Source: Macrostomum lignano | Taxonomy: Eukaryota | Length of the DNA: 64,000 nucleotides | Direction: 5' to 3' | Assembly (NCBI GenBank): GCA_002269645.1 | Contig: NIVC01001630.1 | Span: 186,001-250,000, forward strand | The notes under the pieces: generated by a model | What the model saw: only the letters and a program-made list of their open reading frames with translations | Databases searched by the model: none | Told to the model about the DNA's origin: nothing | Translations under genes and position numbers: made by a program | Shown here: positions 11,001 through 43,000 of the stretch, in pieces | How the letters are laid out: each line of letters begins with the position of its first letter | Position numbering within the stretch: position 1 is the stretch's first letter

Positions 11001-14000
11001 ACCTATTATATATCAACCGGAAGTAGCTAGCTACTTATCAATCAACTGGAAGTAGCTAGCTACTTATCAATCAATCGGAAATATCTAGCTAGCTATTTAT
11101 CAATCAACCGGAAGTAGCTACTACCTATTATAAATCAACCGGAAGTATCTACTACCTATTATAATTCAACTGGAAGTAGCTAATACCTATTATATATCAA
11201 CCGGAAGTAGCTAACTACTTATCAATCAACCGGAAGTAGCTAGCTATTTATCAATCAACCAGAAGTAGCTACTACCTATTATAAATCAACTGGAAGTAGC
11301 TACTACCTATTATAATTCAACTGGAAGTAGCTAATACCTATTATATATCAACCGGAAGTAGCTAGCTACTTATCAATTAACCGGAAGTAGCTACTACCTA
11401 TTATAAATTAACCGGAAGTAGCTACTACCGATTATAAATCAACTGGAAGTAGCTAATACCTATTATAAATCAACCAGAAGTAGCTATCTACTTATCAATC
11501 AACCGGAAGAAGCTGCTATATATTATAAATCAACCGGAAGTAGCTACTACCGATTATAAATCAACCAGAAGTAGCTATCTACTTATCAATCAACCGGAAG
11601 AAGCTGCTATATATTATCAATCAACCGGAAGTAGCTACTATTTATATAATATCAATCAACCGGAAGTAACTTATCTTTGTAATATATTTTCATAGTCCTA
11701 CATGGCAGATCTCACTCCAATGCTCCCTTCAAATTCTACTAAAAAAATGTGAAACCCAGCCTGCATAAATCAACATAGATAACTATAATATATATAACAA
11801 GAAGGCGCAGCCTATACGAGATTAAGTACCAAAATCCCAAATTTACTTGAGCAAGAATATATGAGCAGGGAAATAAGTCTGGCGGATATGCTCAGCCAAA
11901 TAAGCTTCGTAGTCAAGGCCGATAGGAAAAAAGGGCGACCAGCGCGGGGCAGTAAATTATTAATGACTCTTAATTGGGAGGCCTACTAGAAGAGGGCCGG
12001 AGCGGGCAGGCCAGAGTAAGAGCCTCAGTGCGGCTTCGCTTTTTTGCAAGCCAATTTTCCACCCTCTCGATCTTTGCACACACTGAAGCTTAGCCAGGAA
12101 ACCACAAAGAAAAGAAGGGCAGCCACTTCGTTGGCATGGCTAATCCACAAAAAAATCTGGAAAAACATTACAACTCTTTTCTAGATGGCCAAGGGTAGAG
12201 ATCTATTCGTCGAGCTTATGAGCGAGTTCATGAGATTTTATGAGTAAGTTCAAGAGTGAGTTCATGAGTGAGTTCATGATTGAAGTCATGAGTGAGTTCA
12301 TGCGTGAGTTCATGAGTGAGTTCATTATTGAAGTCATGAGTGAGTTCATGCGTGAGTTCATGAGTGAGTTCATAAGTGAGTTCATTAGTGAGTTCATGAG
12401 TGAGATTATGAGTGAGTTCATGATTGAGCTGCATATAAAAACGAACACACAGCTTGAAATGAGATGGGGTCAATGAGTGAGCAGGCATGTGAAGCTGACA
12501 GCTCAATGAAGCAAAAGGTTTCCCCAAGACGTCTCACCCTCCCTAATTGGTGAGGGCTCACGATGCAGCCCTGTCAGGCCGCGTGAGCCCCGTCAGCATG
12601 AGCTGGGAGGCTCTAACAAAATGCGCGGCCCTCATTAGGGTCTGAAGGAAAAAGAATGAGATTGGGACCGACTCTGAATGGGATGCTGCAGATGAAGCTT
12701 TTAACAGTGGCCAGGGGCAGGGAAATTTTTTTTAGAAATCCTAGCCACCTTTTTACCAGGTGAGAAGGAAAGTTTTTCATGTCATTAAAATTTAATAGCA
12801 AGGCCGCACTTGCAGACAGAAACTTTCTGACCCAGAAAAAATATATTAAATAGATCAGCAAAGTATCCTCACACTAGAACTGCATTGAAGTCGGCCAGCA
12901 GCTTCCGAGAATTCAATTCTAGCATCTCGATTGACACTGAAATTGTTAGGATGATTGAGTGATGGTTTTTGAGTTGCCAGTGAGAATGGAAACATTGATA
13001 TACTCGCTACTCTACCTGTGATTCACCGGTTATCTACTAGCTACTCTACCTGTGATTCACCTGTTATCTACTAGCTACTCTATCTGTGATTCACCGGCTA
13101 TCTACTAGCTACTCTATCTGTGATTCACCTGTTATCTACTAGCTACTCTACCTGTGATTCACCGGTTATCTACTAGCTACTCTATCTGTGATTCACCGGC
13201 TATCTACTAGCTACTCTATCTGTGATTCACCTGTTATCTACTAGCTACTCTACCTGTGATTCACCGGTTATCTACTAGCTACTCTATCTGTGATTCACCG
13301 GTTATCTACTAGCTACTCTACCTGTGATTCACCGGTTATCTACTAGCTACTCTACCTGTGATTCACCGGTTATCTACTAGCTACTCTATCTGTGATTCAC
13401 CGGTTATCTACTAGCTACTCTACCTGTGATTCACCGGTTATCTACTAGCTACTCTACCTGTGATTCACCGGTTATCTACTAGCTACTCTACCTGTGATTC
13501 ACCGGTTATCTACTAGCTACTCTACCTGTGATTCACCGGTTATCTACTAGCTACTCTACCTGTGATTCACCTGTTATCTACTAGCTACTCTACCTGTGAT
13601 TCACCTGTTATCTACTAGCTACTCTACCTGTGATTCACCGGTTATCTACTAGCTACTCTACCTGTGATTCACCGGTTATCTACTAGCTACTCTACCTGTG
13701 ATTCACCGGTTATCTACTAGCTACTCTACCTGTGATTCACCTGTTATCTACTAGCTACTCTACCTGTGATTCACCTGTTATCTACTAGCTACTCTACCTG
13801 TGATTCACCGGTTATCTACTAGCTACTCTACCTGTGATTCACCGGTTATCTACTAGCTACTCTACCTGTGATTCACCGGTTATCTACTAGCTACTCTACC
13901 TGTGATTCACCGGTTATCTACTAGCTACTCTACCTGTGATTCACCTGTTATCTACTAGCTACTCTACCTGTGATTCACCTGTTATCTACTAGCTACTCTA

Positions 14001-24750: not shown

Positions 24751-24791
24751 AAAGAGGAACCCTCTTCCCTGGCCTTCTCCGAGTGCCTTCC

Positions 24792-24945
24792 AAGTGACAT
24801 TTGACTGTCAGTGACACTTGACTATCAGTGACATTTGACTGTCAGTGACACTTGACTATCAGTGACATTTGACTGTCAGTGACACTTGACTATCAGTGAC
24901 ATTTGACTGTCAGTGACACTTGACTATCAGTGACATTTGACTGTA
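24792..24945. repeat. 17/34-bp quasi-palindromic tandem repeat (CAGTGACATTTGACTGT/CAGTGACACTTGACTAT)
   Basis: Two alternating 17-mers. Confidence 0.9.
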
Positions 24946-25577
24946 CAGATTTCTAAATCTGTACCTGCAGGGGGTCGAGTCCTCATATGCGACACTAATA
25001 AACAGCGCTAAAATTTCACTCAAATGATGAAAAAATCACTGAAAAAACTTAGGAGACAATATATAGGAGCTGATCAGAGAATATAGCGCTCGATATTCTC
25101 TGGAGCTGATTGACGGCTGTCTGATCGCAAATTAATCTATTTCTACCATAGATTGCTCAAAGTACGTATTAAATTAGCGTCTCAAAGCCATTTCCCTTAG
25201 CTTCAACTTGCTTCATTTTTGCTACCCAAAACCAACACAAATTAAAAGCATCTGCACAACACGGATCTTCTAGCAAACTTCAAACCTGGATTTGGATGAG
25301 TTAGTAGTTTATTTTGCTTGTGATTTTTCCAACCGGAGACAGCTGAACTAATAAATCATGGATGCTTTTCATCACAATATTTTCTTGTCTACAATTTCAG
25401 TGATCCTATTGTCTTTGTTTTGCTGCACAGTTTTTATTCTCTGAATATTCATTTTACATTGTGCCGAAGGGCGTAGACTATCAATGGCCAGTATGAGCTA
25501 GTTTAGCTAGCAGGTTAAACGATCTATTAGGGGGAGGGGCGAAAGAGACTGAGATATAAGAGCAGGGAGACACACAC

Positions 25578-25580
<3 letters not shown>

Positions 25581-25642
<62 letters not shown>
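25581..25642. repeat. (GA)n microsatellite
   Basis: Direct observation. Confidence 0.95.
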
Positions 25643-25646
<4 letters not shown>

Positions 25647-25969
25647 GGAGTGATATTATTCACATATGCTAAATATTTAATTTACTATCTATACGCTACT
25701 ATCACGATATGATATCCTCTGCCGTAATACATGTTGCAAAGTTATAGCAATTCTATCGTGATTAAGGTTATGAGAAGTCTTATTTGAAAAAAGTAATAGC
25801 TCTTATTTAACTACCCATGGAGTAGCTAATACATGAGAATAGTTTATTTTTTGTATACGAGTGTACTATCAATTTTTCAATCAACTATATTTTTTATGGA
25901 AAACGGGTCTGATCAACTGGTTAAACGTATATCAAAGTTTTGTAAACGAAAGTTTTTTTTTGTTTTTTC

Positions 25970-26640
25970 TTATTCCAACTCGCCAAAATCGTTGCCACCC
26001 TCAATCTGTGGTATCGGGCCGGGCGGCGGTGGCGGCCTATTCGGCGTCGTAGCTGGCGGCGGCGACTCAGTAGTAACGCGCTGCGTTGTTGGCGGACGGG
26101 CTGTTGTCAAAGATGCTCGAGTAGTTTTAGGTGTCGGTGGAACCATAGTCTTCCTTGATCTTCCGTTCCGGCGCCATCCTCCCCAGTGGCGTCGCCAGGG
26201 TCGTCCCCAACGGCCGCGACCTCGACCCCAGATCGGCCGACGTCGATTCCACCCATATCGTTTAAAAACCCGCTTGATTTGTTTTGCTGCACGCCGAATC
26301 CTTCTGAATCGGGACTGTTTCTCCGCTTGATCGATTTCCTGTTTGTTTATTTTTTGGTATCGTTATTTTATGTAGACATGAACTAGCGAAATTCAAAACA
26401 ACGAGTCGGTCGCAAAAAAACTTACGTCATCTTCTCCATCTTCGTGGTCGTTAGGAAGGCTTTCCTCAGCTGAAGAATCTTGACTTTCAGTGGCTTCCTC
26501 TTCACTGTTAATATCGTCGATGGCTTCAGCTAGTTGATGGTCTTCACGCTCTGCAGGGTCATCGTGGTAGCGGACGGCGCTACCTGTTGCTAGTGGCAGC
26601 AGCTTGGCGGTAAGAAGCGCTGCATGGCAAGAAATCGCAT
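25970..26640 (-). CDS. Secreted prepropeptide with Arg/Trp/Gly-rich cationic domain and Pro/Thr stalk (gene C); apparent 1-nt frameshift in signal peptide
   Basis: Exon 1 26426-26640: MRFLA../AALLTAKLLPLATGSAVRYHDDPAEREDHQLAE...EDGEDD, donor GTAAGT; 215 nt, one short of a codon multiple. Exon 2 25970-26338: EIDQAEKQSRFRRIRRAAKQIKRVFKRYGWNRRRPIWGRGRGRWGRPWRRHWGGWRRNGRSRKTMVPPTP...GELE-stop. Absent from the ORF track. Confidence 0.75.
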
Positions 26641-27197
26641 ATTTTTGTATTTTCTACCGGCTGTAAAGAAGAGAAAGTATCAGAAATTAACTCGGCTCCG
26701 AGATACAGCTTAAGCGAAAATTTATTTTAAAAAGATTTCTTTTCGAATTCCCGGATTTTCATACTCAATGAAGTCCTGGATATGCAGAGCCAACAGTTGT
26801 TTTGAATTGGCGAGTCACTACTAATAGCATCATAAAGTTTTTTTTCCGAAAAAATTTCAAACAGAATGAACGAGGCATAAGATGCATCTGCAGTCAAGCT
26901 CAAGTATCACCTGTGTGTATTCCAATGTTTTACTCTTAATAGACACCTCAATAGTCGTAGCGCGAGACTAAATAGTAGAAAAAAAAGTGAGGATTAAGGC
27001 TGGCGCATTTTGCTCTTAAGTCTTTCTCGTTTTCAAAGTTCTTAGAACCGCGTATGCGAAAATATTGTCATTTCAGCTTTTTTATTTCAGTCGGACAATC
27101 GAAAATAATACGACACCAGAAACCAAGAGATTTAAAGAGTTAAGTTAGATTTTGACTTAAGACTTTTACGACGCTTTTCTCGCTGAAGGCAGCTAGG

Positions 27198-29090
27198 TTA
27201 GAATGTGCACAGAGTCTTGACAGATCGGCAGCAACCACTCTGACACTGTCCGCAGTAGGTCTTAGCGTTTCCAAGGTCATTATTGTCTCGCAGGTACTTG
27301 ATATAGTCCTTCCATCCTGTGCACGTGTCGCCCCAGGAGTCACCCCAGAAGCAGCTCTCGTCGGCTTCGGGAGCGGAGGTGTCGCTAGCGCACTGGCCGT
27401 CCCAGTTGCAGCTCTTCTTGTTGCCGCAGGGTGTGCCAACGGGGGCCCGGAGACCGCCGCCAGTCACTCCGCTTGAAGAGCCGGCGGTCGGTGTGCAGAA
27501 GATCTTGGCGCAGATCAGTGCCGGATTAGAAGAGACGTCATCAGTGAGGAAGAACTTGCCCGGACTGGATGGATAGGCGAGGCGACACACCTGGTCCAGG
27601 GTCATGCGACCACCTTCGCGAGTCGTTGTAGCCACAGAGGAGTCTGGAGAGCCTTGACGCGACTTCAAGCACTCGGCCTTGCCTAATAAGTTGTAAATTT
27701 TATAACTATTTGTAATTTTTCAATAATTTTGCAAAAAGCCTGTATGTTAGATCAAGGACCACTATGAACACTAGGAACAAGTCTAGTAGTCCTTGTGTTA
27801 GATTTGTGCTGCGTACCTGTAGCCAGATAGTTTTTCATGAAGGTCACTGTGCAGGGAGAAAACCTATACGAGTTGGCGACGTCGCTAAGGGAGTATGACC
27901 CCGCAGAAGGCGACATTAGGAACTTGTAAGCCACTTTGCACGCCGGTTGGTCATTGTCGTGATCGGATCCCATGTTGTGGGCCAGCTCGTGAGACGCTGT
28001 GCCCCAGCTTTGCAAGCCCTGGTCCTCATTGATGCTAACTCGCGTGTCCTGACAGGCGCCTCCAACGTAAGCCATGCCGCACACTGCGGTGTTGCCGCCA
28101 CTCTGGATATCCGTGCGCGTAAACGCCATCACGTGATCGGCAGTCTTGCCAACGGCGTAAGACTTGATGTAGCCGAGGATTGCACTGGCGTCGGTTGCTG
28201 TTCAGTAGCGGATTGAGGAAGTGATAATTTAATAGATTTAGCTATTTCAGAATTATTAGCAAAATTTATCGTACTTACCGTCAGACGAACCAGCTGGAGG
28301 CATCCATTGCGAATCAGCCTGCGTCTTTGCCACGGTGAGGCCGGTGCACTTGACACTCATAGACGGGTTTCCGACGTTTCTGAACGCTGTATCGATTCCG
28401 TTCAAAATGTGCGTGTAATAATAGTGAAGCTCTGTCATAGCTGCAGCATCAGTGCTGTAAATTGTCTTAAACGCGTTCCACACAGTGTGGTCCAGAAGCA
28501 AAAGGAGCTCCACCTCAAGATCTGTAGCAGCTTGATTGGACTGACGCTTCTTGCGGCTCATTACTTGCATGACCTTCGACTTGTCAATCTGCGACTCAAT
28601 ACCGTCTGGCTGGGCAATGTTGCGTGTGACTTGATGCTCTGAAGCACCGCTTGGCTTGACGAAATAGGATGTACCTTCGTGCATCACGTGACCGCTGAAG
28701 CGTTTCTTTCCCTTCTCGTGTCGAACACTGATGACAGACTTGCTCTCGATGTCCCTGTAGTGAGCGTGACTCGCGTGGTGAGCTTGGCGAGCTGAAAAAG
28801 TCCTGGAGACTCCATTCTCTCTCACGGTCATTGGCACACTCTCAAAGGCGTCAGTCTTTTCCAATGGAATGCGGACCTTCTTGTTCGTGCTGGGCAGCTG
28901 TACTTCGATCTCCATAGACGAAGGATGCGGTCCATCGTTGCTGGATCGAGTCACAGACACTGAAGCCTGGGCCGCAGCAACAGCGAGCAGAAATATGACT
29001 GCAAAATTGATAGATAATTACGCTGAAAACTTGCTTCGATGTTTGTTGTGACACATGAATGATAAATCACTACTTACCAAGGCGCAGCAT
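27198..29090 (-). CDS. Secreted M12B (reprolysin/ADAMTS-like) zinc metalloprotease, paralog 1
   Basis: Exons 29078-29090, 28279-28998, 27817-28197, 27198-27682 (all phase 1). Signal MLRLVIFLLAVAAAQA, furin site RKKR, HELAHNMGSDHD, Met-turn FLMSP, Cys-rich domain. Confidence 0.92.
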
Positions 29091-30489
29091 TTTCAGAGCG
29101 CTGGTCAAAACGACAATTTGTAGGTTTCTGTTCCACTCAGACACAAGGTTTAAGTGGGCTTATCTTTATCGGCAAGGATCAACCACTGACCGTCTTCGTT
29201 TTTATGCTTTTGATCGCAGTTGTAGCGGATATTGGTTAAGCACAATTAATTCCTGGCCACGACTTTGGCAACAACGATTGCCAGCTTGGACTTGACCAAC
29301 TATAGTCATTGAAATGCCAGAACTTACCAGTCCGGATATTAAATTCCGTAAATAAAAGATTACCCTTCCACGACCCATGACGCTACTAAAGATTTTCGAA
29401 AAAAAATGTTCGTGAGAGCGCATCTTCTCGGTCTCATAAATGCCATTAAAACTAAAAAAATCAAGCACCAGCAATTTCCGGGGATTGTTATTCCAACTGA
29501 AGTCGATCGTTTTTTTAAAATTCAATTCGTGTCGAACTTTCTTGAACACTTCGACACGTTCGAATTTAAGCTGTAGCATGAGATGCAGGGCAAAATTTCA
29601 AATCCATAGCATGCTTGATGGATTCGATCAGGCAACGAGTCAATAAACATTCTTGATTAGTAGAGTATAAATTTTATGCACTCCCAAATTTCAAAATTTA
29701 GGAAATATTACTACTCTATAATGTTAGCATTTTAGCAAATCAGTTGCTTCGCAGAAGTTTCAGAGGGTTAAATGACTGGATTTTTCATGCTTGATGATAC
29801 AACAACTGTTGAAAGGTTTGAAATAGCCGCACTGTATAAACGCTTTGACATATCGTTGACAGCGAGCGTACGAGTCGTATATCAGTTTGAAGCTGTCCAG
29901 AGCACCCCGGGAAGAGTATGCATGACGCATGGGAATGCAATTTTCTATATGTGAGCGTCCACACATTCCATTTCGTTTCCTGACTTGCACTAATTATTTT
30001 TTAACACTGCATCAAAGTATTTATACTTGTGGTTCGTCAAACCGACCATCGATCAGAATTCGTATTCACGAGCTTGTAGACTGCAATAAAAAAATTACAG
30101 ACAAGAATTTCTGTAGCATTGGAGAATAATTGTTCGATACTTTCGAATTTTCTTGGAAATAATCTATCGAGGTGAGACTTGAGTTTTTTTTAATTTTTTA
30201 ATTTCAACAAAAACTTCTTGAGAGAAAAAAAAGTTAAGTATAATAGAGATAAGTATAGGCTAAAACTGGATCAATATGATAGATTGGGCAAGCATAACTC
30301 CACCCAAAGCTAGCTAGCTGGTAGCACTTGTTCAAGCACGAGTTAAAACAAGTTAAACTCAATACATAGAAATTTCACTTCCGTACATTGTCCGCATTCC
30401 ACTGCGAGAACAGATCTTGCGTTTATAAAAAACTAAAAAAACGCTACTGGCAAAAAAGTATTAAAGATAATCATTTTATTCATACTTAA

Positions 30490-31192
30490 CACGCCTCCCC
30501 TGAAGAGAGAATTCGGTCGATAAAATATGCCCTGAAAACTACTGATTTCCCATGAATCCATGACCCAGCAGAAGTCCAAAAAAGCAATCCTAGAAATCCT
30601 ATCGCATTGTCTGCACAGTGTACAGGTATGCAAAATATTACAGTGACTTTAGTTGATATCGGTATAGAATGAAACTAATCCATTCTGCCAGAGCCTCAGA
30701 AGTTGGCCTTTCATGGCTGAGTATCGCCTCAGGCCAATCGCACGGAATCGAACCAACTATACATGCATACATTTTTTCGCAAGAGGCAGCTGCTCAGCCT
30801 CTCAATTGCTTCATCAGTTGTTTATTATTAAAGTGCAGCCGAGCTCTGGCAGCCCGTCTCTATTCTGTCCAGCTCTCGGCCTGCCCAGGACAGTGCGGGA
30901 CTCACATATAGGCTGATTTTGGATTTCACACGGTTTATCTGTGCACTGCGGCTGCCTGGCTTTTTTATTGCATTTTGCACTTGGTGACCGGCACTTTAGC
31001 ATTTCACTGCTGAGATTTGTCAACTCGAAAGCTCAGCTTCTCTACTCTCCATAAGATCCCAGCTCAGCTTCTTTGTTCTCTATCAGATCCCAGCTCAGAT
31101 CATGCAGACTCTGCTGGGTCATGGATTCATGGGAAATCAGAAGTTTTCAGGGCATATTGTATCGACCGAATTCTGTCTTCAGGGGAGGCGTG
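30490..31192. mobile_element. MITE with 83-bp TIRs and TTAA target duplication (piggyBac-like)
   Basis: TIRs 30490-30572 and 31110-31192; TTAA at 30486-89 and 31193-96; no transposase ORF. Confidence 0.82.
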
Positions 31193-31655
31193 TTAAGCCC
31201 ATTCAATTAGAACTTTATAGCAATACAATCCGAACTAAAAGTTTTTGTACAATCAATTCTATCCAATCAATTTAATACAGCGTTTGTTGGTAAGTTTCGA
31301 TAACAATACATGCATGCTCTCCAATAAATGTTTCGTTTAATCGTAGATTAACTTCATTCAGATACAGCCCAGAATAGCACTAACACAACTAACTAGTCCT
31401 ACAAGCAACATGCGCTCAAGGACAACTATGTATGTTAGTTAAGTAGTCCTTGCATGCGCTGCGGCAGCTTTATAATTAATAAATTGCCACAATATTTTTA
31501 CCAAAACAGACACGCCTTGACTGATTAGTCTTTCTTTTTATGCATTTATTCTCCTCTTTTGTATTTTTCTATCCGGTATGTTTCTATTAACGATGTAATA
31601 ATCTCTATCTTCCGCTTCAGTGCCCGCACACGCGGCAGCGAACCAAAGAAAACCG

Positions 31656-33647
31656 ATGAAAATGCTGAAAATAGGTGAGTTAACCACAGAACATACAGAA
31701 GCTCTGTGGAGTCAACTGCATATGCTTCAGGAAATTAATTACGTATGTTTACGAGTCGTACGTGCTCAATATTTTAGCTATATTTCTGGCCGTCTCTGCG
31801 GCAGCCCAGGCCTCGGTGTCCGTGACGCAATCCAGCGGTGACGGACCTCACCCGTCCTCCATGGAGATCGAGCTCCAGCTGCCCGACACCGACAAGAAAG
31901 TCCGCATCCCGCTGACCAAGACTGCTCCGTTGGATGGCGCTGTGGTCACTGTGACGGACGGTGGAGTCTCCAGGACGTTCTCTGGCCGACAAGCTCAACA
32001 CGGAGATCAAGCTCACTACAGAAACGTTGATAGCAAGTCAGTGATCAGCGTTCGACACGAGAACGGCACAAAGCGCATCAGCGGTCACGTGATGCACGAA
32101 GGCACCTCGTATGTCATCCAGCCGATCGGCGACTCTGGGCACCGCGTCTCCAAAACCAGCGAAACCGCGGATGAGCCGCAGCCCGAGCAGTTGCTGAGTC
32201 GCAAGAAACGCCGAGTGAACCGAGAGGCTACCGAATACGAAGTTGAGATCCACATCCTCATTGATCACACCGTTTGGAAGGCTTTCAAGACAATTTTCGG
32301 TACAGATGAAGAAGCCCTGACTGAGCTGCACTTCTACTATTCTCACATTGTGATTGGCATGGACACGGTCTTCAGGAACATCGGCAGTCCGTCAATCAGT
32401 GTCAGGTGCATTGGGTTAACAGTAGCCAAGACTGAAGCCGATGCAAAGTGGATGCCACCGGATAGCTCGGCTGATGGTACGCGCTTTAGTGCGCTTTTGT
32501 CTTACTTGACATACCTGAATTAGCTGCAGGGGGTTCTGGGCGTCCGGAAACAGCGAAAAGGCGTTGAGAGAGTAGTAATTTGAATAATGTGTAATTTAAA
32601 AACTATTTCAGCGTTGAAGTGTTCTCTCAAACAGATTTTTTAGCAAGCGATGGTGGTGCCACTCTCGGCAGAATCCGAGCGTACTCGAAAGGCGACAGAG
32701 CCGATCACGTGATGGGCTTCACCCGGAGAGATATTTCGCTAGGCAAGAACTCTGCGGTGACAGGAGTCGCTTTTGAAAATAGCGCCTGCCAAGAGACGAA
32801 GGTCAGCGTTGTCGAAGATTCCGGCCTCCACAGCTGGATGACGGCCGCGCACGAGCTCGCGCACAACTTGGGGGCCAGTCACGATAATAACGAACCCGGA
32901 TGCGAAATGGATCTGAAGTTCATAATGTCGCCTGCCGCTACATCCTACGATCTCAGCAACATAGCCAATTCCTACCGGTTCTCTCCGTGCACAGTGGGGC
33001 AGATCAGGACCTATCTCGACTCCGGTAAGTTTTTCGCGTTTCTTTGAGTTGTTTTATTTCTAAGGAATTGTCTAATTTGGAAATCAGAGCTTTTCTTAAG
33101 CTTTGACGCAAAGAAGTGAAAAACATTGATACGTCAAAAATATTTGAATGCCTAACCAGGAAAAGCAGCGTGTCTGCAGTCTCGTCAAGGCACCCCCGTC
33201 AGCCAACTGACAAGCTCTGTCCGCGAAGGAGCTCGCATGTCCCTCGATCAGGTGTGCCGTCTCAATTACCCATCGAGTCCCGGCAATATTTTCTTGACGG
33301 AGGACGTTAAAGCAAACCCGGCTCTGATGTGCGCCAAAATGCACTGCCTCTTGAAGGCCGACCACGCACACGGAACAACTAGCACCGGCTTCCGCGCCCC
33401 AGTCGGGTCGCCCTGCGGCAACAAGAAGAGCTGCAATTGGGACGGCCAGTGCGTTGCCGACGAAGCAGCACCCGCTGCAGACGAAAGCTGCTTCTTTGGC
33501 GACATATGGGGCGACCAATGTGGGGGGTGGAAAACCTACATCGAGTACCTGCGCAACACGGATCAAAAATCTCAACGCAGGAGCTACTGCGGCCAGACGC
33601 AAACGAATTGTTGCGCTAGTCTCAAGAATTTGTGTCGGTTTGATTAA
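31656..33647 (+). CDS. Secreted M12B (reprolysin/ADAMTS-like) zinc metalloprotease, paralog 2
   Basis: Exons 31656-31674, 31778-32476, 32644-33024, 33160-33647. Same intron positions as paralog 1. Signal MKMLKIAIFLAVSAAAQA, RKKRR, HELAHNLGASHD, FIMSP, Cys-rich domain. Confidence 0.92.
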
Positions 33648-34242
33648 GCTTGGTGGGAAAAAAAGTTCCAAAGAAATTACCAAGCAACTCATAGAACTGC
33701 GAAAATAGATTGAAAACTTTTGGAGTAAAATTTGGGATCTTGCTGAGTTATCAAAAATGTCTCGTTTTCTTCAATTTCGTGAAACTCTGACACCGAAAAT
33801 AAAAAAATACGTTCATAAATTGATTGAAGGTAATACTTTTTAAAGTTTTAATATGAGTAATATGTACCGCATATTTAATTTTTATTCATTTTTATTTTAA
33901 TCAAGTGTACTGCATTTCGAATTCGTTATATTTTCTGCAGCTATATTTTAATTAAACAAATTTTATACAATTTAGCTTGCAACTTACAATATTTTATACA
34001 AAAGCTATTTAAAATGGAATACATCTCCTGCACCTCACGAAAAACTATATATAGGCTTGAAAATTTAATCAAACTTAATTAAAAGTAACTATTATACGAA
34101 TATAATCCCTTGCAGAAGTAGCGATTCCGATTAAGGTAGTCTTTTTCACTGGCACTTTTTCAGCAGCTAGAGCATCATGGCGGTGACCGATTAAAGGGGC
34201 GGTCGCATCGCACAGGAAGCCAGCTGCTTTACTTTACTTTAT

Positions 34243-34452
34243 GGTAACAGCGACTCAAAGCCCCGCTTCCGGCAGCGCCGTGCAAAGACAGTCTCTGGTA
34301 ACAGCGACTCAAAGCCCCGCTTCCGGCAGCGCCGTGCAAAGACAGTCTCTGGTAACAGCGACTCAAAGCCCCGCTTCCGGCAGCGCCGTGCAAAGACAGT
34401 CTCTGGTAACAGCGACTCAAAGCCCCGCTTCCGGCAGCGCCGTGCAAAGACA
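34243..34452. repeat. 54-bp tandem repeat x4, each with CTTCCGG (ETS-type site, minus strand)
   Basis: Near-identical copies starting at 34243, 34297, 34351, 34405. Confidence 0.93.
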
Positions 34453-34895: not shown

Positions 34896-35949
34896 AAGCC
34901 CACATTTTCTTGTCTGGGGTCCAAGCAATGTGCATAAAATGTACTGCTATATACAGATACGGCAGAATATGCATGATCTGATCGTGATGTGAAAATTAAG
35001 CCGTTGTCAGTGCAAGAGTTACAAGATCCTCGCTTTGAAGCATATAATTTGAGCTTAGTATCTCATCAAAAGCTTTTTGCTCTTTTCTGTAACCTTCAGA
35101 GACCGCTGGCATTACACAAAGTTTACATTTGAAGAGCAATAAATTGACTATTAAATCACATCAATACGAAATATTTTTTGCCTTATAATATACACAATTA
35201 TGTGGTTTTATGAAGTATTTTTTACTGTCTTTTAAATATAAAATAATTATGCAACACAAAATACGATAGCCATGAGTAAGTTAATGAAGTGCGCGGTTAG
35301 GTAGGCTCAATCAGTTGTTAATTTGAATTTGCTTTTTTAGGCCGTGCTGCATGTGTAATTAATTTTGAATGCACAATAAGCAAAAGCTACACAATACATA
35401 AAATATTAGAGTAAACATTATTTACAGAACACATACTATGTACATGTTCATGCAAAATGTTTCTACTTAACCTAAAGTATACAGATCTAGATATAGTCAA
35501 TTACTTTATCAAATTCCGTTTGTAAATTTAGAGAATTACATGCATGGCTACAGAACTATATAGGTACTACCATCGCATGTATATGAATTAGAGTCAATAT
35601 AGTTAAACAAAAAATGCCCACTCAAAACCGTTGGTCGAATATCAGTGTTTAGAAGTTTTTTCATGTACCTTTCTAGCATTTTTACGCATTTTGATTCCAT
35701 TGTTTGCAGTCATGGATATGCATCGGTCACACGTGTCTGAAAGTTAGCGATTACGAATAGTTTTAATAATCTGGAGTTACTAAACAATAACTACATACCT
35801 GATTCAGCCTGTTCTAGAGATATGAATTCAGGCAGAAGTCTAAACCTCTTTCAAATATCTTAAAGAACCATGCGGATATAAAAAAGAGCTTCGGTACTTT
35901 AACTGAAGTGAAGTGGCGCCTCTTAAAGCGAAAAGCACGCTGCACCTTT

Positions 35950-36908
35950 CTGAAGTGTCAATCATCCTTCCCAAAGTGTCAACCATCCTTCCTAAAGTGT
36001 CAACCATCCTTCCCAAAGTGTCAACCATCCTTCCCAAAGTGTCAACCATCCTTCCCAAAGTGTCAACCATCCTTCCCAAAGTGTCAACCATCCTTCCCAA
36101 AGTGTCAACCATCCTTCCCAAAGTGTCAACCATCCTTCCCAAAGTGTCAACCATCCTTGCCAAAGTGTCAACCATCCTTCCCAAAGTGTCAACCATCCTT
36201 CCCAAAGTGTCAACCATCCTTCCCAAAGTGTCAACCATCCTTCCCAAAGTGTCAACCATCCTTCCCAAAGTGTCAACCATCCTTCCCAAAGTGTCAACCA
36301 TCCTTGCCAAAGTGTCAACCATCCTTCCCAAAGTGTCAACCATCCTTCCCAAAGTGTCAACCATCCTTCCCAAAGTGTCAACCATCCTTCCCAAAGTGTC
36401 AACCATCCTTCCCAAAGTGTCAACCATCCTTGCCAAAGTGTCAACCATCCTTCCCAAAGTGTCAACCATCCTTTCCAAAGTGTCAACCATCCTTTCCAAA
36501 GTGTCAACCATCCTTCCCAAAGTGTCAACCATCCTTCCCAAAGTGTCAACCATCCTTCCCAAAGTGTCAACCATCCTTCCCAAAGTGTCAACCATCCTTG
36601 CCAAAGTGTCAACCATCCTTCCCAAAGTGTCAACCATCCTTCCCAAAGTGTCAACCATCCTTCCCAAAGTGTCAACCATCCTTCCCAAAGTGTCAACCAT
36701 CCTTCCCAAAGTGTCAACCATCCTTCTCAAAGTGTCAACCATCCTTCCCAAAGTGTCAACCATCCTTTTTGAAGTGTCAACTATCCTTTCTAAAGTGTCA
36801 ACCATCCTTTTTGAAGTGTCAACCATCCTTCATGTAGTGTCAACCATCCTTCATGTAGTGTCAACCATCCTTCATGTAGTGTCAACCATCCTTTTTGAAG
36901 TGTCAACC
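35950..36908. repeat. 21-bp minisatellite (AAAGTGTCAACCATCCTTCCC)n
   Basis: Direct tandem repeat. Confidence 0.97.
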
Positions 36909-37057
36909 TCTTTTCAAATTAAAATCCTTTTTCCTGAACTGGTAGTTTTCGCCATTGTCCACCCCACTAAGGAGATAAATTGATGTTAAAAAGCTGTACT
37001 TTTTCACATATTGCCTAATATATGTATGCGAAAATATAACAGTTATATCCATAATTC

Positions 37058-40000
37058 TTACGAGCTTCTCCTTGCATCTTGCTGATCTTCTACTCCGGAA
37101 ACAGCACTGGCTGCAGCAATGCCAACGCTCCCAGTTCCCGTACTATCAATAGTCGCCGGCTCAACATCAGTGAAACTACTCAAGTGAGTAGTATAACGCT
37201 GGTGCTGCTGCTGTTGCTGGTGATGATGAGTAACCGATATTGTTGTGGTCAATAACGACTCCATATCGCCGCTACTCCTAGTATAGTGTAATTGCTGGCT
37301 GCTATTGCTACTAATAGTTGAGTAGCTGCTGGTTGCTATGGCAACAGTTGCCGAGCGTTGTTGCTGTTGATGCACCGGATGCTGCTGATGATGATTACGC
37401 AATCGTACTGCGTCGACGCTGGTTTGAGGCTGCAGGGACGGAGCGCTGGGTTGCAGAGCGACCGTCTTCTGCTGCTGCAGCTGTTGTTGCTGCTGCTGCA
37501 GCTGTGCCGCAAGCAGAATCCTGGCCTGCGAAATTCGATCACTCCACTCGTCCGTTGCCTTCTGACTATCGCAGGCGAGGCACATCAGGCAGTCAACGCT
37601 GCCAAAATCAGTGAGAGCCACTAGAAGTAAGGAATCTGTGGAGAAGAAATTCGGTTTAAAATTCGGTTTCGGTTCGAAGAATCGAAGCATCCCAGCAACT
37701 CTCAATTGAGCCTTGGCATCTCAGCAACTCTCCATTGAGCCATGGCATTTCAGCAACTCCCACATTGACCCTGGCATCTCAGCAACTCTCAATTGAGCCA
37801 TGGCATCACAGCAACTCTCCATTGAGCCAATTGGCATCTCAGCAACTCCCCATTGAGCCAATTGGCATCTCAGCAACTCCCCATTGAGCCATAGCATCTC
37901 AGCAACTCTCAATTGAGCCTTGGCATCACAGCAACTCTCAATTGAGCCTTGGCATCTCAGCAACTCCCCATTGAGCCATGGCATCTCAGCAACTCCCCAT
38001 TGAGCCATAGCATCTCAGCAACTCCCCATTGAGCCATAGCATCTCAGCAACTCCCCATTGAGCCAATTGGCATCTCAGCAACTCCCCATTGAGCCATAGC
38101 ATCTCAGCAACTCCCCATTGAGCCATGGCATCTCAGCAACTCTCCATTGAGCCGTGACATCTCAGCAAAATTATTTTAACCATATGTGGCCTTGGCATGA
38201 TGGACGCTCGAAAAATTCTCAACAACCACGAGATGACTCGTATGCAGCATGTAGCTTTACTGTATTGAATCTGATTGAAACTCACTATTTGGGTCGCTCA
38301 GCTTGTGCAACACAAGCCGGTCCAGACGCAGCGGCGGTCTTAGCAACCGAAGACTGTTGCGCTTGCTGCTTTTGGCTAGGAGCAGCAGATCGGTGAACAG
38401 CAGGCACTTGGCGTCGTTCCACTGAGTTCGTAGGGTAGAATAGAAATTTTTGTTTAAAATGGTGGAACAAAAACATGTCTGATTTATTAATTTAATAGCC
38501 AGTGTAATAACTGTGCTATAATCTGTAAATAGCTATATGTAGGATTTAGCACACTCAACCAGCTAAATGACTGCAAGATAATCAAGTAGCTCAAGTGGTC
38601 AAGGTGAATGCCTTGCTCACCTTCCCCTTTTCGTCCTTGAATCTGACGTCGCCTTCAGAGATTCTCCTCCTCAACTGTCCATTGTGCGGCATTGGCCTCA
38701 TCAAGTTGAGCCTGTAGGACTCCAGCACAGTTGCAGTCTCGTCTCCCAGGCCGTCGATCCAGTCAGGCAGCTTGGCGTCCTCGATTCGATCCGCCACTCC
38801 TCGCAGCTCTGCCTGGTCGCATTTGGCCCGATATGTGGAGTTCAACTCGTTGCAGAACGACGTCACGTGACTGATCTGTTGTCAAAAAATAAGAAACTCA
38901 GGCCCGTTGCGTATTGCAAAAATTATTTCACAAGCGCGACATTTGCCCTGACTTTCTAATCGTCAACAAACCCTCAACCCTCAAAATGAATGCATGAGTT
39001 AATCAGCTCTTATCTAAGACAAATTTACTCATGTCAAAAGTTAAACCAACCATCGATTCCAAAGCAAGCCGTTCCTCTCCATCTTCGGTGTGTCGCAGAA
39101 TCTCCTGCAGCAGCAGGCCGTACTTCATCACCCGCTGTAGGGGCATGGTGAGCAGTGAGCCAAGCTGCAGGTCCACCGCACCGTCCTCGGAGTTGTAATT
39201 TCGCTGGCTGACTCTCTGCGCCCACTGGAACGAGTGGCGGTGGTCGCATAGTGAAATTTAATCTCGTAAATTTTTGTTAAAATGACTATTCAAACTCGAA
39301 AGTGAGATTAAGGCAACAATGCATTTGAAATTAGGAGTGTAAAATGACGAAAAGTAAAATGGCGCCCAATACTGGGGAAAATTGGCGCTAAATGTTGGAG
39401 TAGAATGGCGCCAAATGTTGGGATCGAAAGGCGCCAAATGTTGGAGTAGAATGGCGCCAAATGTTGGGATGGAATGGCACCAAATGTTGGGGTAGAATGG
39501 CGCCAAATGTTGGGATGGAAAGGCGCCAAATGTTGGAGTAGAATGGCGCCAAATGTTGGGATGGAATGGCACCAAATGTTGGGGTAGAATGGCGCAAAAT
39601 GTTGGGATGGAATGGCACCAAATGCTGGGGTAGAATGGCGCAAAATGTTGGGATGAAATGGCACCAAATGTTGGGATGGAAAGGCGCCAAATGTTGGGAT
39701 GGAATGGCGCCAAATGTTGGGGTAGAATGGCGCCAAACGTTGGGATGGAATGGCGTTAAATGTTGAGGTATAATGGCGCCAAATTTTGGGATAGAATGGC
39801 GCGTATATTTTGGTATAGTGGTACCTGAAAGTTTGAGTCGAATATCGTGAGCAAACACTACTTTAAGTAAATTTAATAGAATTTCAATTCGCAAATGACA
39901 GTTGTACCTTAAGAAAGTCTGCAAACACTTCGTTCTTTTCCAGAATCTTTAAGTAGTCCTTGGCCTCGGCAATTCGCAGGCAGTACTGCGCTGACGGGGC

Positions 40001-43000
40001 GAATATTTCGCGGAAACTCGTGAAGCCTCGATAGAACGCTGTCGGTCGCATTGGCAACCCAGACTGTCTGGCTGACACCAGAGCCGGTTGCAGGTGCTCT
40101 GTCCAGAGGGCCCGGTGAGCCTGGAAGACTGGCAGGATGCCGGGAAACAGCTGGTCGGAGCTGACGTCAGCCAGGAGATTTGCGCTGCTCTGCAGGTGCC
40201 TCAGGACCGTCATGTGCACCTGCATTTGCGGGGAGGGGGGTGGTGTGTCTCAGTGTGTGTCTCAGTGTGTGGCTCAGTGTGTATCTCAGTGTCTGTCTCA
40301 GTGTGTGTCTCAGTGTGTGGCTCAGTGTCTGTCTCAGTGTCTGTCTCAGTGTGTGTCTCAGTGTGTGTCTCAGTGTGTCTCAGTGTGTGTCTCAGTGTGT
40401 GTCTCAGTGTCTGTCGCAGTGTCTGTCTCAGTGTCTGTCTCAGTGTCTGTCTCAGTGCCTGTCTCAGTGCCCATCTTTCTCATCTTCTGACCCAATCGCA
40501 GCAATCCCAAATCTTCCGAAAGCACCAAAGCTGAATCTTATATGCACTCAGAGTTCACCAATTTATGAGTGCTAATCTGCAAATGGGAATAATATTGATC
40601 CTAAATCCCTAATGTGCTGTGATCTGTAACCCGCTGCCTCCAGCAAAAATACTGAATGCAACCAGAAACTTATATATGATCATGCACGCAGTTTGGAATT
40701 ATCTTTCGATCTGTTGAGAGCCATGAGTGAATATTTTTCAATCAGTATCCATTTTTGCTTCATCAACTGAGTCGACTCAAGGGTCAGATCCGCTTCATCA
40801 TATATCTGAACCGAATATGTTCTCGAATATCTCCGAATCAGTAAGAGAGAAGTAGAGTGGGAGAGTAGTAGATTGGAAGAGAAGTAGAGTGGGAGAGAAG
40901 TAGATTGGAAGAGAAGTAGAGTGGGAGAGAAGTAGAGTGGGAGAGAAGTAGAGTGGGAGAGAAGTAGAGTGGGAGAGAAGTAGATTGGAGGAGAAGTAGA
41001 GTGAAAGGAGAAGTAGAGTGGAAGGAGAAGTAGAGTGGGAGGAGAAGTAGAGTGGGAGGAGAAGTAGAGTGGGAGGAGAAGTAGAGTGGGAGGCAAGCAG
41101 AGTGTACAGAGAAATTGAGAATCACAAGTTTGAGAAGGCTGCTCACCTCAATAATAGTCTTCAGGTGCCTCAAAATATTGACCTCAGTCTGCAGCAGCTC
41201 CCAGATTGCCGCCTGCTGTTTCACAGCTTTGGCGGTTGTTGTGTTCTGGAAGCAGTGGTTTGTTCAAGCATTCGGTGGTTCTTTTAAAACTCAGAAATGC
41301 AGCAGCTCAGGCATAAAACTCACCTCTGGAGCTACAACCCGATCCCAGGAGGGCTCGAGCTCGAGACCTAGCGACTCCAATTGTTCTTGATTGTCAGGCT
41401 TTGGCATTGCCGAGCTGTGCTCACAGAGTCTCAAGCAGTCAGCCAGTTTGTCTCGATTGTCCTGAGGGGTTTAAAAGTTATTGAGTTTTATCACCTGGTT
41501 GATCTATTATTTGCTGTCAAACGAATTTTTATAAAAAATTTTAAAAAGGTTTTTTGATGCATCGATTTTTTAAAACTGACACCGTGCGACTTAAATATTT
41601 GACCTGCAAATCGAAATAAAATTTTATTTAGACATAACCTTACTTAGACACAACCTCATTCGGACACAACCTCACTCGGACACAACCTCACTCGGACACA
41701 ACCTCATTCAGACACAACCTCACTCGGACACAACCTCACTCGGACAAAACCTCACTCGGACACAACCTCACTCGGACACAACCTCATTCAGACACAACCT
41801 CACTCGGACACAACCTCACTCGGACACAACCTCACTCGGACACAACCTCACTTGGACACAACCTCACTCGGACACAACCTCAACCTCACTCGGACACAAC
41901 CTCACTCGGACACAACCTCAACCTCACTCGGACACAACCTCACTCGGACACAACCTCAACCTCACTCGGACACAACCTCACTCGGACACAACCTCAACCT
42001 CACTCGGACACAACCTCACTCGGACACAACCTCAACCTCACTCGGACACAACCTCACTCGGACACAACCTCAACCTCACTCGGACACAACCTCACTCGGA
42101 CACAACCTCAACCTCACTCGGACACAACCTCACTCGGACACAACCTCAACCTCACTCGGACACAACCTCAACCTCACTCGGACACAACCTCAACCTCACT
42201 CGGACACAACCTCACTCGGACACAACCTCAACCTCACTCGGACATAACCTCACTCGGACACAACCTCAACCTCACTCGGACACAACCTCAACCTCACTCG
42301 GACATAACCTCACTCGGACACAACCTCACTCGGACACAACCTCACTCGGACACAACCTCACTCGGACACAACCTCACTCGGACACAACCTCAACGAAAAC
42401 TTGTTGGACAATATGCAGCACATAGATTTGAGAAAGCACTACCCGTTATAATACAAGATAGATATAATCAGTTCTTTGCGTTTTATGCACTAAAGTTTGG
42501 TGCTCTCTCCAACCACCGATTAAATTCGAGTTTTTCCGCCTAGAAAACTGAAAAAACCCTCTGTCCAAGCAACCGCTGAACGAAGTTGGCTGGCTGAATT
42601 GCGTCGCCACTTCAATATTGAGTGTTGATGCTGCTGCAGCTGCTGCAATTGCTGAAGAATGAAACAACGGATTGATAGTACGAGTGCCATCACAGATTTA
42701 TGCTTATTCCCGTTATCCCCCAGCACGCGAACGGTGCACCTGGTGCCAGATAGATAGAGACATAGATAGAGAGATAGAGATAGATCATGTAGAAATAGAG
42801 AGATAGGAGAAATGCCAGGAGAGGGAACAAAGGAGAAGATAGGAGAGAAGAGGTTAGAGAAAACAGAGGTGAGAAGAGAGTAGAGAAGAGATTAGAGAGA
42901 ACGGAGGTGAGAAGAGAGTAGAGAAGAGATTAAAGAGAACGGAGGTGAGAAGAGAGTAGAGAAGAGATTAGAGAGAACGGAGGTGAGAAGAGAGGAGAGA

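What the first reader, a model, noticed from the sequence alone, without database searches (positions are those of the whole stretch)
25970..26338. Unannotated Arg/Trp/Gly-rich peptide on a mucin-like stalk
Seen: after RFRR comes IRRAAKQIKRVFKRYGWNRRRPIWGRGRGRWGRPWRRHWGGWRRNGRSRK (6 Trp, no acidic residue), then a Pro/Thr stalk and acidic tail. It is missed by the ORF track because the exon lacks its own early start. Established: Arg/Trp-rich peptides (indolicidin, tritrpticin) are membrane-active antimicrobials. Inference: a novel AMP, or a cation-pi coacervate/adhesive component.
Basis: partly seen in the sequence, partly recalled or inferred. Interest (0 to 1): 0.72.

Follow-up and report, generated by a model that had tools for sequence, protein, structure and literature searches.

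The report
Orphan Arg/Trp-rich peptide ORF, flatworm
An unannotated two-exon reading frame in the flatworm Macrostomum lignano would encode a secreted-looking precursor in which an acidic block masks a very basic Arg/Trp/Gly-rich peptide, but it has no start codon of its own and no relative anywhere, so whether it is made and what it does remain untested.

Summary
On the minus strand, 26338..25970 reads exactly as quoted: 50 aa with 17 R, 4 K, 8 G, 6 W and no D/E, then a 45-aa Pro/Thr tract and an acidic tail. It joins in phase, through a canonical 87-nt intron (GTAAGT…CAG), to an acidic exon at 26653..26426.

The window is Macrostomum lignano (Mlig_3_7, NIVC01001630.1). No gene is called here or in the near-identical second copy (NIVC01001390.1). 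No protein in any frame exists in 5.8 billion clusters, and the spliced product has none among 1.84 billion representatives.

In favour of a coding origin, the sequence is not a repeat, nucleotide composition cannot produce the peptide (0 of 200,000 simulations), and only the two real protease genes share the two-exon structure.

Against, there is no in-frame ATG. The frame opens after a TAG stop (26656..26654) that lies 7 nt past a consensus spliced-leader acceptor, so only the leader's own 3' AUG, joined at that second AG, would start it. Codon usage and copy-to-copy identity are uninformative, and no expression data could be reached.

My best reading (about 0.45) is a lineage-restricted, charge-neutralised secretory prepropeptide gene. 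An antimicrobial or adhesive role is pure inference.

The parts
26654..26682 (-). Polypyrimidine tract with two closely spaced acceptor AGs. ctttacag| (last G at 26661) matches the M. lignano SL trans-splice motif [T/C]TNCAG. ccggtag| (TAG at 26656..26654) is both the in-frame stop that bounds the ORF and the only AG that would put the spliced leader's 3' ATG in frame.
   Evidence: Sequence. SL sequence and acceptor motif from PMC8629364. Use of either AG is inferred, not shown.
26590..26640 (-). The only genomic ATG near the 5' end, which is out of frame. It opens a 16-codon ORF, MRFLAMQRFLPPSCCH*, and would need one extra base to run into the leader frame.
   Evidence: The layout is identical in the second copy L002.
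26426..26653 (-). Exon A, 76 codons: KIQKYAISCHAALLTAKLLPLATGSAV (a signal-peptide-like hydrophobic leader) followed by an acidic block (24 D/E in 57 aa, net -21) that runs 9 codons into exon B.
   Evidence: This is the only open frame through the exon. It is stop-free in only 1.4% of composition-matched simulations.
26339..26425 (-). An 87-nt intron, GTAAGT...AACAG, phase 0 at both ends. It carries the single substitution (26349 T/C) found between the two genomic copies in this gene.
   Evidence: The donor and acceptor fit the M. lignano cis-splice motifs GT[G/A]AG and CAG (PMC8629364).
25970..26338 (-). Exon B, 122 codons plus the TAA stop.
   Evidence: It is stop-free in 3.7% of composition-matched simulations.
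26300..26311 (-). RFRR, an R-X-[K/R]-R proprotein-convertase-type motif at the boundary between the acidic and basic blocks. It lies inside the one confidently predicted helix.
   Evidence: Cleavage has not been tested.
26150..26314 (-). Basic block of 55 aa (net +24, 6 Trp, 8 Gly, no D/E). An N-terminal amphipathic helix FRRIRRAAKQIKRVFKRY (hydrophobic moment about 1.0) is followed by a disordered W/R/G tract.
   Evidence: Arg uses all six codons and Gly all four.
26015..26149 (-). Pro/Thr-rich linker of 45 aa (15 P, 14 S/T). It is non-repetitive and predicted to be disordered.
25973..26014 (-). Acidic C-terminal tail IPQIEGGNDFGELE (net -4).
25843..25848 (-). AATAAA about 122 nt downstream of the stop, a candidate poly(A) signal. 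Divergence between the two genomic copies rises sharply just beyond it, from 25853 downward.

Best explanation
This is a lineage-restricted (orphan), unannotated two-exon gene of Macrostomum lignano. It lies 537 nt downstream of a reprolysin-type metalloprotease gene on the same strand. It would encode a prepropeptide of about 199 aa made of a hydrophobic secretory leader, an acidic pro-region (-21), an RFRR convertase-type site inside an amphipathic helix, a disordered Arg/Trp/Gly polycation (+24), a short Pro/Thr linker and an acidic tail.

The inferred mechanism is as follows. The acidic block neutralises the polycation during synthesis and storage. A furin-like convertase then releases the cationic part into a secretion, where it acts through charge and Trp-mediated interactions, either as a host-defence-like peptide or as a polyanion-binding one.

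The assembled sequence has no in-frame ATG, so translation would need one of two things. The spliced leader's 3'-terminal AUG could be trans-spliced at the AG of TAG (26654|26653), which is a documented flatworm mechanism. Alternatively, a one-base difference from the assembly in the first ~40 nt would join the frame either to the genomic ATG at 26640 or to the leader's AUG at the consensus acceptor.

What is shown: the ORF, the splice signals and their phase, the non-random composition and the orphan status. What is inferred: transcription, trans-splicing, secretion, cleavage and activity.
For: The sequence and splice phase are as stated. Only three loci in the non-repeat window have an in-phase two-exon ORF structure of this size, and the other two are the real metalloprotease genes. 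Chance expectation is about 0.1 per window and 0.3% for local composition. The amino-acid composition cannot be reached from the nucleotide composition (0 of 200,000 simulations). There is no DNA repeat, and Arg and Gly use all their codons. Three compositionally different segments (GAN-rich, NGN-rich, CCN/ACN-rich) share one frame across the intron. The blocks of -21 and +24 nearly cancel, the helix has a hydrophobic moment of about 1.0, and AF2 predicts that helix at pLDDT up to 93. The antisense 165-aa ORF loses its ATG in the second copy. A consensus SL acceptor TTTACAG sits at the ORF's 5' edge, and the gene lies within the 1-kb operon distance used for M. lignano (PMC8629364). Flatworm SLs end in AUG, which can initiate translation (Cheng 2006, cited in PMC12582326). 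The annotation ran TransDecoder on SL-trimmed transcripts (PMC5730564), so such an ORF would be missed. As a calibration, a 758-codon ORF in the same window with pN/pS 0.23 between the two copies also has no gene call in the one copy whose calls cover it and no early ATG.
Against: Neither genomic copy has an in-frame ATG. The consensus acceptor CAG (26661) puts the SL AUG in the wrong frame, giving a 27-codon ORF, and only the weaker downstream TAG acceptor works. No homologue or fragment exists in 5.8 billion or 1.84 billion proteins, and there is no paralogue in the window or next to a third protease locus. Codon-usage scores give no coding signal: -0.18 against +0.14 to +0.38 for real exons, and about 0 for the synonymous-only test. 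The near-identity of the two copies extends over introns and intergenic DNA, so it shows no selection on the peptide. The leader is only moderately hydrophobic, with a Lys and a His inside it. The thresholds used in the chance tests were set after seeing the target. No RNA or peptide evidence could be accessed.
Confidence: 0.45

Rival explanations
1. It is a gene relic or a young pseudogene. A formerly ATG-initiated secretory peptide gene lost its start through a 1-nt frameshift between the ATG at 26640 and the hydrophobic leader, before the two genomic copies separated. The rest of the frame is still open only because the event is recent.
For: The ATG at 26640 is followed by MRFLA..., and adding one base would give MRFSCHAALLTAKLLPLATGSAV, a better leader. 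Both copies share the frameshifted layout. The composition still looks protein-like. No annotation or homologue exists.
Against: The frame stays open for 198 codons across an intact intron. The two copies show almost no divergence here, so decay cannot be measured. An SL-AUG route to translation exists.
Confidence: 0.2
2. It is a fortuitous open frame in GC-rich, low-complexity non-coding DNA (intergenic sequence, a 3' region or a non-coding RNA), with splice-like signals present by chance.
For: About 38% of the window is minisatellite, and such DNA produces odd ORFs, for example RVRW repeats at 3432..3839. Several frames on both strands are open across the R/W segment. There is no codon-usage signal, no ATG, no homologue, and no constraint detectable on the peptide. 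At about 0.1 chance structures per 40 kb, the 764-Mb genome would hold well over a thousand such structures.
Against: There is no repeat at the DNA level. The composition cannot be reached from the nucleotide content. One frame is kept across three compositional blocks and an intron. The hydrophobic start, the balanced charge blocks, the consensus acceptor at the 5' edge and AATAAA at the 3' side together form a coherent gene-like layout.
Confidence: 0.2
3. The gene is real and conventionally initiated, and the missing start is an assembly artefact. A residual homopolymer error (A5 at 26646..26642 or T3 at 26634..26632) would be present in both contigs of the PacBio/Canu assembly.
For: The assembly is PacBio-based with Pilon polishing (PMC5730564). 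The two copies differ by homopolymer-length indels about once per kb. One such indel (T5/T4) shifts the 5' end of the selected 758-codon ORF in one copy.
Against: The same error would have to occur in two independently assembled contigs, and in short runs (3 to 5 nt) where consensus errors are uncommon.
Confidence: 0.1
4. A different product is made from the same transcript. Candidates are the AUG-initiated 82-aa acidic or Gly-rich ORF in another frame of the spliced mRNA (MEKMTKSIKRR...LEHL), and the 58-aa Pro/Thr peptide from the ATG at 26146.
For: These are the only AUG-initiated sense ORFs longer than 50 codons in the spliced sequence.
Against: Neither has a leader, a homologue or any record. 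Both are short, and upstream AUGs precede them.
Confidence: 0.05

Closest known systems
Taxonomically restricted cationic peptide precursors with an anionic pro-region, such as the Hydra arminins (from my own knowledge: Augustin et al. 2009; not retrieved here)
   Same: A small orphan gene with a signal peptide, then a negatively charged N-terminal region, then a highly cationic C-terminal peptide released by processing. It has no homologues outside the lineage.
   Different: There is no sequence similarity. Here the cation is Arg/Trp/Gly-rich and is followed by a Pro/Thr linker and an acidic tail. Expression and activity are untested, and the start codon is unresolved.
   Same: High Arg and Trp content, no acidic residues, and release from a larger precursor.
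   Different: Those are 13-residue vertebrate peptides cut from a cathelin-domain precursor. No cathelin domain is present here. The basic block is 55 aa, Gly-rich, and only 11% Trp. No homology was found.
Charge-neutralising pro-pieces of mammalian pro-defensins and eosinophil pro-MBP (from my own knowledge)
   Same: An anionic pro-segment whose charge nearly cancels that of the cationic mature part (-21 against +24).
   Different: The cationic part has no cysteine framework and no lectin fold, and it is predicted to be disordered.
M. lignano adhesive protein Mlig-ap1 (PMC6410801)
   Same: Same organism, an extremely basic Lys/Arg-rich secreted protein, and no homologues outside the lineage. 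Charge interactions govern adhesion and release in this animal.
   Different: Mlig-ap1 is 5,407 aa, with more than 3,600 aa of KR repeats plus lectin, vWD and EGF domains. The target is about 199 aa, non-repetitive, Trp-rich and domain-less.
Flatworm mRNAs that use the spliced leader's 3'-terminal AUG as initiator (Cheng et al. 2006 J Biol Chem, cited in PMC12582326)
   Same: The ORF has no genomic AUG and opens right at an acceptor AG in an SL trans-splicing species whose SL ends in ATG.
   Different: SL addition at this locus has not been shown. The in-frame AG is not the consensus one.

Membership tests
Cathelicidin-type Trp/Arg AMPs (indolicidin, tritrpticin) | A precursor with a cathelin-like pro-domain (Pfam Cathelicidins) | tested here: not met
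   hmmscan against Pfam at E<=0.1 gave only two sub-threshold low-complexity hits (DUF4633, Sigma70_ner) and no cathelin domain.
Cathelicidin-type Trp/Arg AMPs (indolicidin, tritrpticin) | A short mature peptide (about 13 aa) with very high Trp content and demonstrated membrane activity | not testable with these tools
   The basic block is 55 aa with 6 Trp. Activity needs a synthetic peptide and MIC assays.
Charge-neutralised secretory prepropeptide (arminin-like or pro-defensin-like architecture) | An N-terminal signal peptide | tested here: inconclusive
   The hydrophobic stretch AISCHAALLTAKLLPLA has a mean Kyte-Doolittle score of 1.4 to 1.8 and is followed by the small residues TGSAV. It contains Lys and His, its Met is not encoded in the genome, and no signal-peptide predictor was available.
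Charge-neutralised secretory prepropeptide (arminin-like or pro-defensin-like architecture) | An anionic pro-region balancing a cationic mature region | tested here: met
   Net -21 over 57 aa is followed by net +24 over 55 aa.
Charge-neutralised secretory prepropeptide (arminin-like or pro-defensin-like architecture) | A basic processing site between the pro-region and the mature region, and actual cleavage | tested here: inconclusive
   RFRR (R-X-R-R) lies at the boundary, and further KR and RR sites lie inside the basic block. Cleavage has not been tested, and the site lies in a predicted helix.
Charge-neutralised secretory prepropeptide (arminin-like or pro-defensin-like architecture) | Expressed and translated | not testable with these tools
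   No RNA-seq or proteomic data for M. lignano could be queried. Exact-ORF look-ups found no record.
Mucin or mucin-like stalk | A long tandemly repeated Pro/Thr/Ser domain | tested here: not met
   The tract is 45 aa with 15 P and 14 S/T and has no tandem repeat.
SL trans-spliced downstream gene of an M. lignano operon | An acceptor matching [T/C]TNCAG at the 5' end with no upstream cis donor | tested here: met
   TTTACAG ends at 26661. There is no GT[AG]AG donor in the 537-nt spacer on this strand (motif from PMC8629364).
SL trans-spliced downstream gene of an M. lignano operon | Less than 1 kb downstream of a gene on the same strand | tested here: met
   The MP-A stop is at 27198 and the acceptor at 26661, which is 537 nt.
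SL trans-spliced downstream gene of an M. lignano operon | RNA-seq reads carrying the SL joined at the acceptor | not testable with these tools
   No read-level data were available.
SL-AUG-initiated flatworm mRNA | The SL's terminal AUG in frame with the ORF at the acceptor that is actually used | tested here: inconclusive
   It is in frame at the TAG acceptor (26654|26653) and out of frame at the consensus CAG acceptor (26661|26660). Which acceptor is used is unknown.
M. lignano duo-gland adhesive proteins (Mlig-ap1, Mlig-ap2) | Very large proteins with KR-repeat regions or glycosylated repeats plus lectin, vWD or EGF domains | tested here: not met
   The product is about 199 aa with no Pfam domain and no repeats. 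The defining features come from PMC6410801.

The most novel reading that the evidence does not exclude
The locus is a functional flatworm-specific gene for a secreted Arg/Trp/Gly-rich polycationic peptide (host-defence or polyanion-binding) whose initiator methionine is supplied only by the spliced leader. Together with the 758-codon ATG-less ORF 7 kb away, it would point to a class of SL-AUG-dependent secretory genes that the M. lignano annotation pipeline systematically misses.
Probability: 0.2. Interest if true: 0.6.

Novelty: new variant of a known kind. Interest (0 to 1): 0.38.

Why it matters
If the gene is real, it adds an orphan cationic peptide of unusual composition (Arg/Trp/Gly with a Pro/Thr tail) to a phylum in which I know of no characterised gene-encoded host-defence peptide. 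My literature searches found none for Macrostomum. It would also do so in a tractable model animal with RNAi and transgenesis. It would further show that genes depending on the spliced leader's AUG escape an annotation built on leader-trimmed transcripts, which is a practical blind spot for Macrostomum genomics. If the gene is not real, it is a useful example of how gene-like a start-less low-complexity ORF can look.

Tried and rejected
- **Homology.** phmmer-type searches of the spliced product against 5.8 billion clusters and 1.84 billion representatives found nothing. The other frames and the antisense ORFs against 5.8 billion clusters also gave nothing. Pfam gave only sub-threshold noise. 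The only PDB match is a designed coiled coil, which reflects heptad amphipathicity and not homology.
- **Paralogues.** There is none in the window and none beside a third metalloprotease locus, L003.
- **Second genomic copy as a test of selection.** I rejected this. The low-divergence block 28217..25854 (2 differences in 2.4 kb) includes introns and spacer, so it says nothing about the peptide.
- **Codon usage.** The log-likelihood test is confounded by composition and came out negative. The synonymous-only test has no power in this genome.
- **Plus-strand 165-aa ORF as the real gene.** I rejected this. Its ATG is absent from the second copy and it has no record.
- **Translated minisatellite.** I rejected this on the TRF and repeat scans.
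- **Upstream cis exon supplying the ATG.** I rejected this because the spacer holds no GT[AG]AG donor.
- **Exact-ORF look-ups for cDNA contigs.** No records were found.
- **Logan cDNA contigs.** Those found (L004 to L007) belong to the MP-A orthologue of another Macrostomum species, 70 to 78% identical at the nucleotide level. That is too distant to look for the peptide.
- **Literature.** Searches for the peptide string, the neighbouring gene IDs and Macrostomum antimicrobial peptides found nothing relevant.
- **Rfam.** No RNA family matched in the window.

Full report
**1. What is there**

The reading is EIDQAEKQSRFRR, then the 50-aa stretch IRRAAKQIKRVFKRYGWNRRRPIWGRGRGRWGRPWRRHWGGWRRNGRSRK, then a Pro/Thr tract, then the tail IPQIEGGNDFGELE and a TAA stop.
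- The 50-aa stretch holds 17 R, 4 K, 8 G and 6 W, with no D/E.
- The 45-aa Pro/Thr tract holds 15 P and 14 S/T.
- The mechanical ORF list shows only a 58-aa ORF from the internal ATG at 26146, which explains why the peptide was missed.

Upstream, one frame alone is open through 26653..26426. It reads KIQKYAISCHAALLTAKLLPLATGSAV, followed by the start of a 57-aa acidic block with 24 D/E that ends 9 codons into exon B. That exon ends at GAC|GTAAGT (26426|26425), and exon B begins after aaacag| (26339|26338). Both junctions are phase 0 and the intron is 87 nt. These signals fit the published M. lignano cis-splice motifs GT[G/A]AG and CAG (PMC8629364). An AATAAA lies about 122 nt beyond the stop, at 25848..25843.

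**2. Where it is**

The flanking genes are two head-to-head M12B reprolysin/ADAMTS-like metalloproteases. Their best database matches are Macrostomum lignano proteins.
- The window is 100% identical to NIVC01001630.1 of assembly Mlig_3_7, with window position 1 equal to record position 186,001.
- GenBank calls no gene between MP-A (29090..27198, minus strand) and the 74-aa gene at 22962..23936.
- A second copy of the whole locus lies on NIVC01001390.1 (L002). It also has no gene call at the target, and its reading-frame layout is identical.
- Mlig_3_7 is known to contain about 180 Mb of duplicated blocks at least 95% identical (PMC5730564).

**3. Is it more than chance?**
- TRF at a low threshold and a seed-based repeat scan find no tandem or cryptic repeat.
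- Sequences simulated with the segment's own dinucleotide content are stop-free 35% of the time. Only 0.14% also lack D/E, and none of 200,000 also reached >=6 W and >=21 K+R.
- Arg uses all six codons and Gly all four, so the bias is at the amino-acid level.
- I scanned both strands of the window for in-phase two-exon ORFs (>=70 and >=115 codons, canonical signals, intron of 40 to 250 nt). Three non-repeat loci passed: MP-A, MP-B and the target.
- Markov-3 simulation expects about 0.1 such locus per window, and local-composition simulation gives 0.3%. The thresholds were chosen after seeing the target, and genome-wide a rate of 0.1 per 40 kb still allows many false structures. I treat this as suggestive, not decisive.

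**4. Evidence that does not help, or counts against**
- The two genomic copies differ at only two positions between 28217 and 25854. That block also covers MP-A introns and the spacer, so it is regional identity and not constraint on the peptide.
- Codon log-likelihood gives no coding signal: -0.18 for exon B against +0.14 to +0.38 for real exons. The synonymous-only test has no power in this genome.
- No homologue exists in 5.8 billion clusters or 1.84 billion representatives read exhaustively. No protein from any other frame of this stretch is on record.
- No paralogue lies in the window or beside a third protease locus.
- RNA-seq assemblies in the collection include another Macrostomum species (L004 to L007; its MP-A orthologue is 70 to 78% identical at the nucleotide level). 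No M. lignano cDNA of these genes is evident, so the absence of fragments says little about expression.

**5. The start-codon problem**

The claimed frame has no ATG before the one at 26146.
- The nearest genomic ATG (26640) is in another frame and stops after 16 codons.
- The 537-nt spacer contains no GT[AG]AG donor, so a cis-spliced upstream exon is unlikely.
- The frame opens immediately after TAG (26656..26654), which lies 7 nt downstream of ctttacag (26661). That sequence matches the M. lignano trans-splice acceptor motif [T/C]TNCAG.
- The M. lignano spliced leader ends in ...TTGCATG (PMC8629364). Flatworm SL 3' AUGs are documented initiators (Cheng et al. 2006, cited in PMC12582326).
- Joined at the TAG acceptor, the SL AUG gives MKIQKYAISCHAALLTAKLLPLATGSAV..., which is in frame. 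Joined at the consensus CAG acceptor, it gives an unrelated 27-codon ORF.
- A one-base difference in the A5 or T3 runs would also restore a start. The two contigs do differ by homopolymer indels about once per kb, but both contigs agree at these positions.
- The annotation used TransDecoder on SL-trimmed transcripts, so this ORF could not have been called in any case.

**6. A calibration from the same window**

A 758-codon ORF (19765..17456, minus strand) carries 96-aa repeats and has no early ATG, and no gene is called at its position in L002.
- It opens at a consensus tttcag|AAA acceptor, in phase 0 in this copy.
- Between the two genomic copies it shows 25 synonymous and 19 non-synonymous differences, for pN/pS of about 0.23. 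It is therefore a genuine gene under selection.
- 'Unannotated and ATG-less' is thus compatible with a real gene here.
- The caveat is that the other copy has one T fewer just after the acceptor, which puts the acceptor out of phase. Fine-scale frame arguments near homopolymers in this assembly are fragile.

**7. What the product would look like**

| Segment | Length | Net charge | Note |
|---|---|---|---|
| Leader | 28 aa | +3 | moderately hydrophobic |
| Acidic block | 57 aa | -21 | 24 D/E |
| Basic block | 55 aa | +24 | 6 W, 8 G, no D/E |
| P/T linker | 45 aa | +4 | 15 P, 14 S/T |
| Tail | 14 aa | -4 | acidic |

RFRR marks the boundary between the acidic and basic blocks, and several KR and RR sites lie within the basic block. 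FRRIRRAAKQIKRVFKRY has a helical hydrophobic moment of about 1.0. AF2 predicts a single helix over QAEKQSRFRRIRRAAKQIKRVFKR (pLDDT up to 93), with the W/R/G and P/T parts disordered.

This is the layout of charge-neutralised cationic-peptide precursors. By analogy, the acidic part masks the polycation until a convertase releases it. An antimicrobial, polyanion-binding or adhesive-modulating role all remain inference. Pfam finds no cathelin domain, so it is not an indolicidin-type precursor. It is also unlike Mlig-ap1 and Mlig-ap2 in size, repeats and domains.

**8. Verdict**

I put about 0.45 on a functional, lineage-restricted prepropeptide gene, started either by the SL AUG or through some other route not resolved here. 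A further 0.1 goes to the same gene with a conventional start hidden by an assembly error. I put about 0.2 on a recent relic with a lost start, about 0.2 on a chance ORF, and about 0.05 on another product of the same transcript. A specific antimicrobial role has perhaps 0.15 overall.

The kind (an orphan cationic prepropeptide) is known. The composition, the appended P/T-acidic tail and the possible dependence on the SL AUG make it a new variant if it is real. Interest is moderate, because everything decisive (junction reads, SL reads, peptide detection, activity) is cheap to obtain but was out of reach here.

Noticed in passing
window 17456..19774 (minus strand); L002 18125..20452: A 758-codon ORF encoding a Lys-rich helical protein with 3.1 tandem 288-nt (96-aa) repeats, and no gene call at the equivalent place in L002. 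It has no in-frame ATG before codon 158. It opens at a consensus tttcag|AAA acceptor, in phase 0 here, which would give MKPRRHPKKFFFVPFLV... with the SL AUG. In L002 the acceptor is out of phase because of a T5/T4 indel. pN/pS between the two copies is about 0.23, so the gene is real and under selection.
   Followed up: partly
window 27198..29090 (minus strand) and 31623..33647 (plus strand): A head-to-head pair of secreted M12B reprolysin/ADAMTS-like metalloprotease genes (HELAHNxGxxHD, ADAMTS_CR_2), about 57 to 65% identical to each other. They belong to a family with at least 13 clusters in M. lignano. An orthologue of MP-A is expressed, without a spliced leader, in RNA-seq of another Macrostomum species (SRR28338163 to SRR28338166).
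   Followed up: partly
whole window, e.g. 8..999, 8492..9639, 13001..14130, 14864..16339, 46406..47628, 48578..50008: Extreme minisatellite density. TRF returned 54 rows, and about 24 kb of the 64 kb (38%) was masked as tandem repeat. Many repeats are open in several frames and mimic long ORFs of up to 503 aa.
   Followed up: no
window 17351..34452 compared with L002 (NIVC01001390.1:68335-90227): The whole locus exists twice in the assembly, at 94 to 99% identity. Nearly identical blocks (2 differences in 2.4 kb at 28217..25854) alternate with divergent ones (12 to 15 differences per 200 nt at 25400..25800). This fits the duplicated chromosome content of the DV1 line, or gene conversion.
   Followed up: partly
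window 21687..22046 (minus strand): A 119-aa ORF with Mos1/mariner-type transposase HTH domains (HTH_48, HTH_32, HTH_23). It is probably a transposon fragment.
   Followed up: no
window 26426..26440 spliced to 26338..26107 (minus strand): In the spliced transcript, an AUG-initiated 82-codon ORF (MEKMTKSIKRR...LEHL) overlaps the R/W region in another frame. It has no homologue.
   Followed up: partly
window 37058..37705 (minus strand), inside the RhoGEF gene call 35727..43647: A poly-Gln/His-rich 215-aa ORF with no Pfam match. It is presumably a low-complexity exon of the RhoGEF gene.
   Followed up: no
window 22962..23936 (plus strand): An annotated 74-aa two-exon gene with no Pfam domain, conserved in position in L002 (14778..15752).
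   Followed up: no
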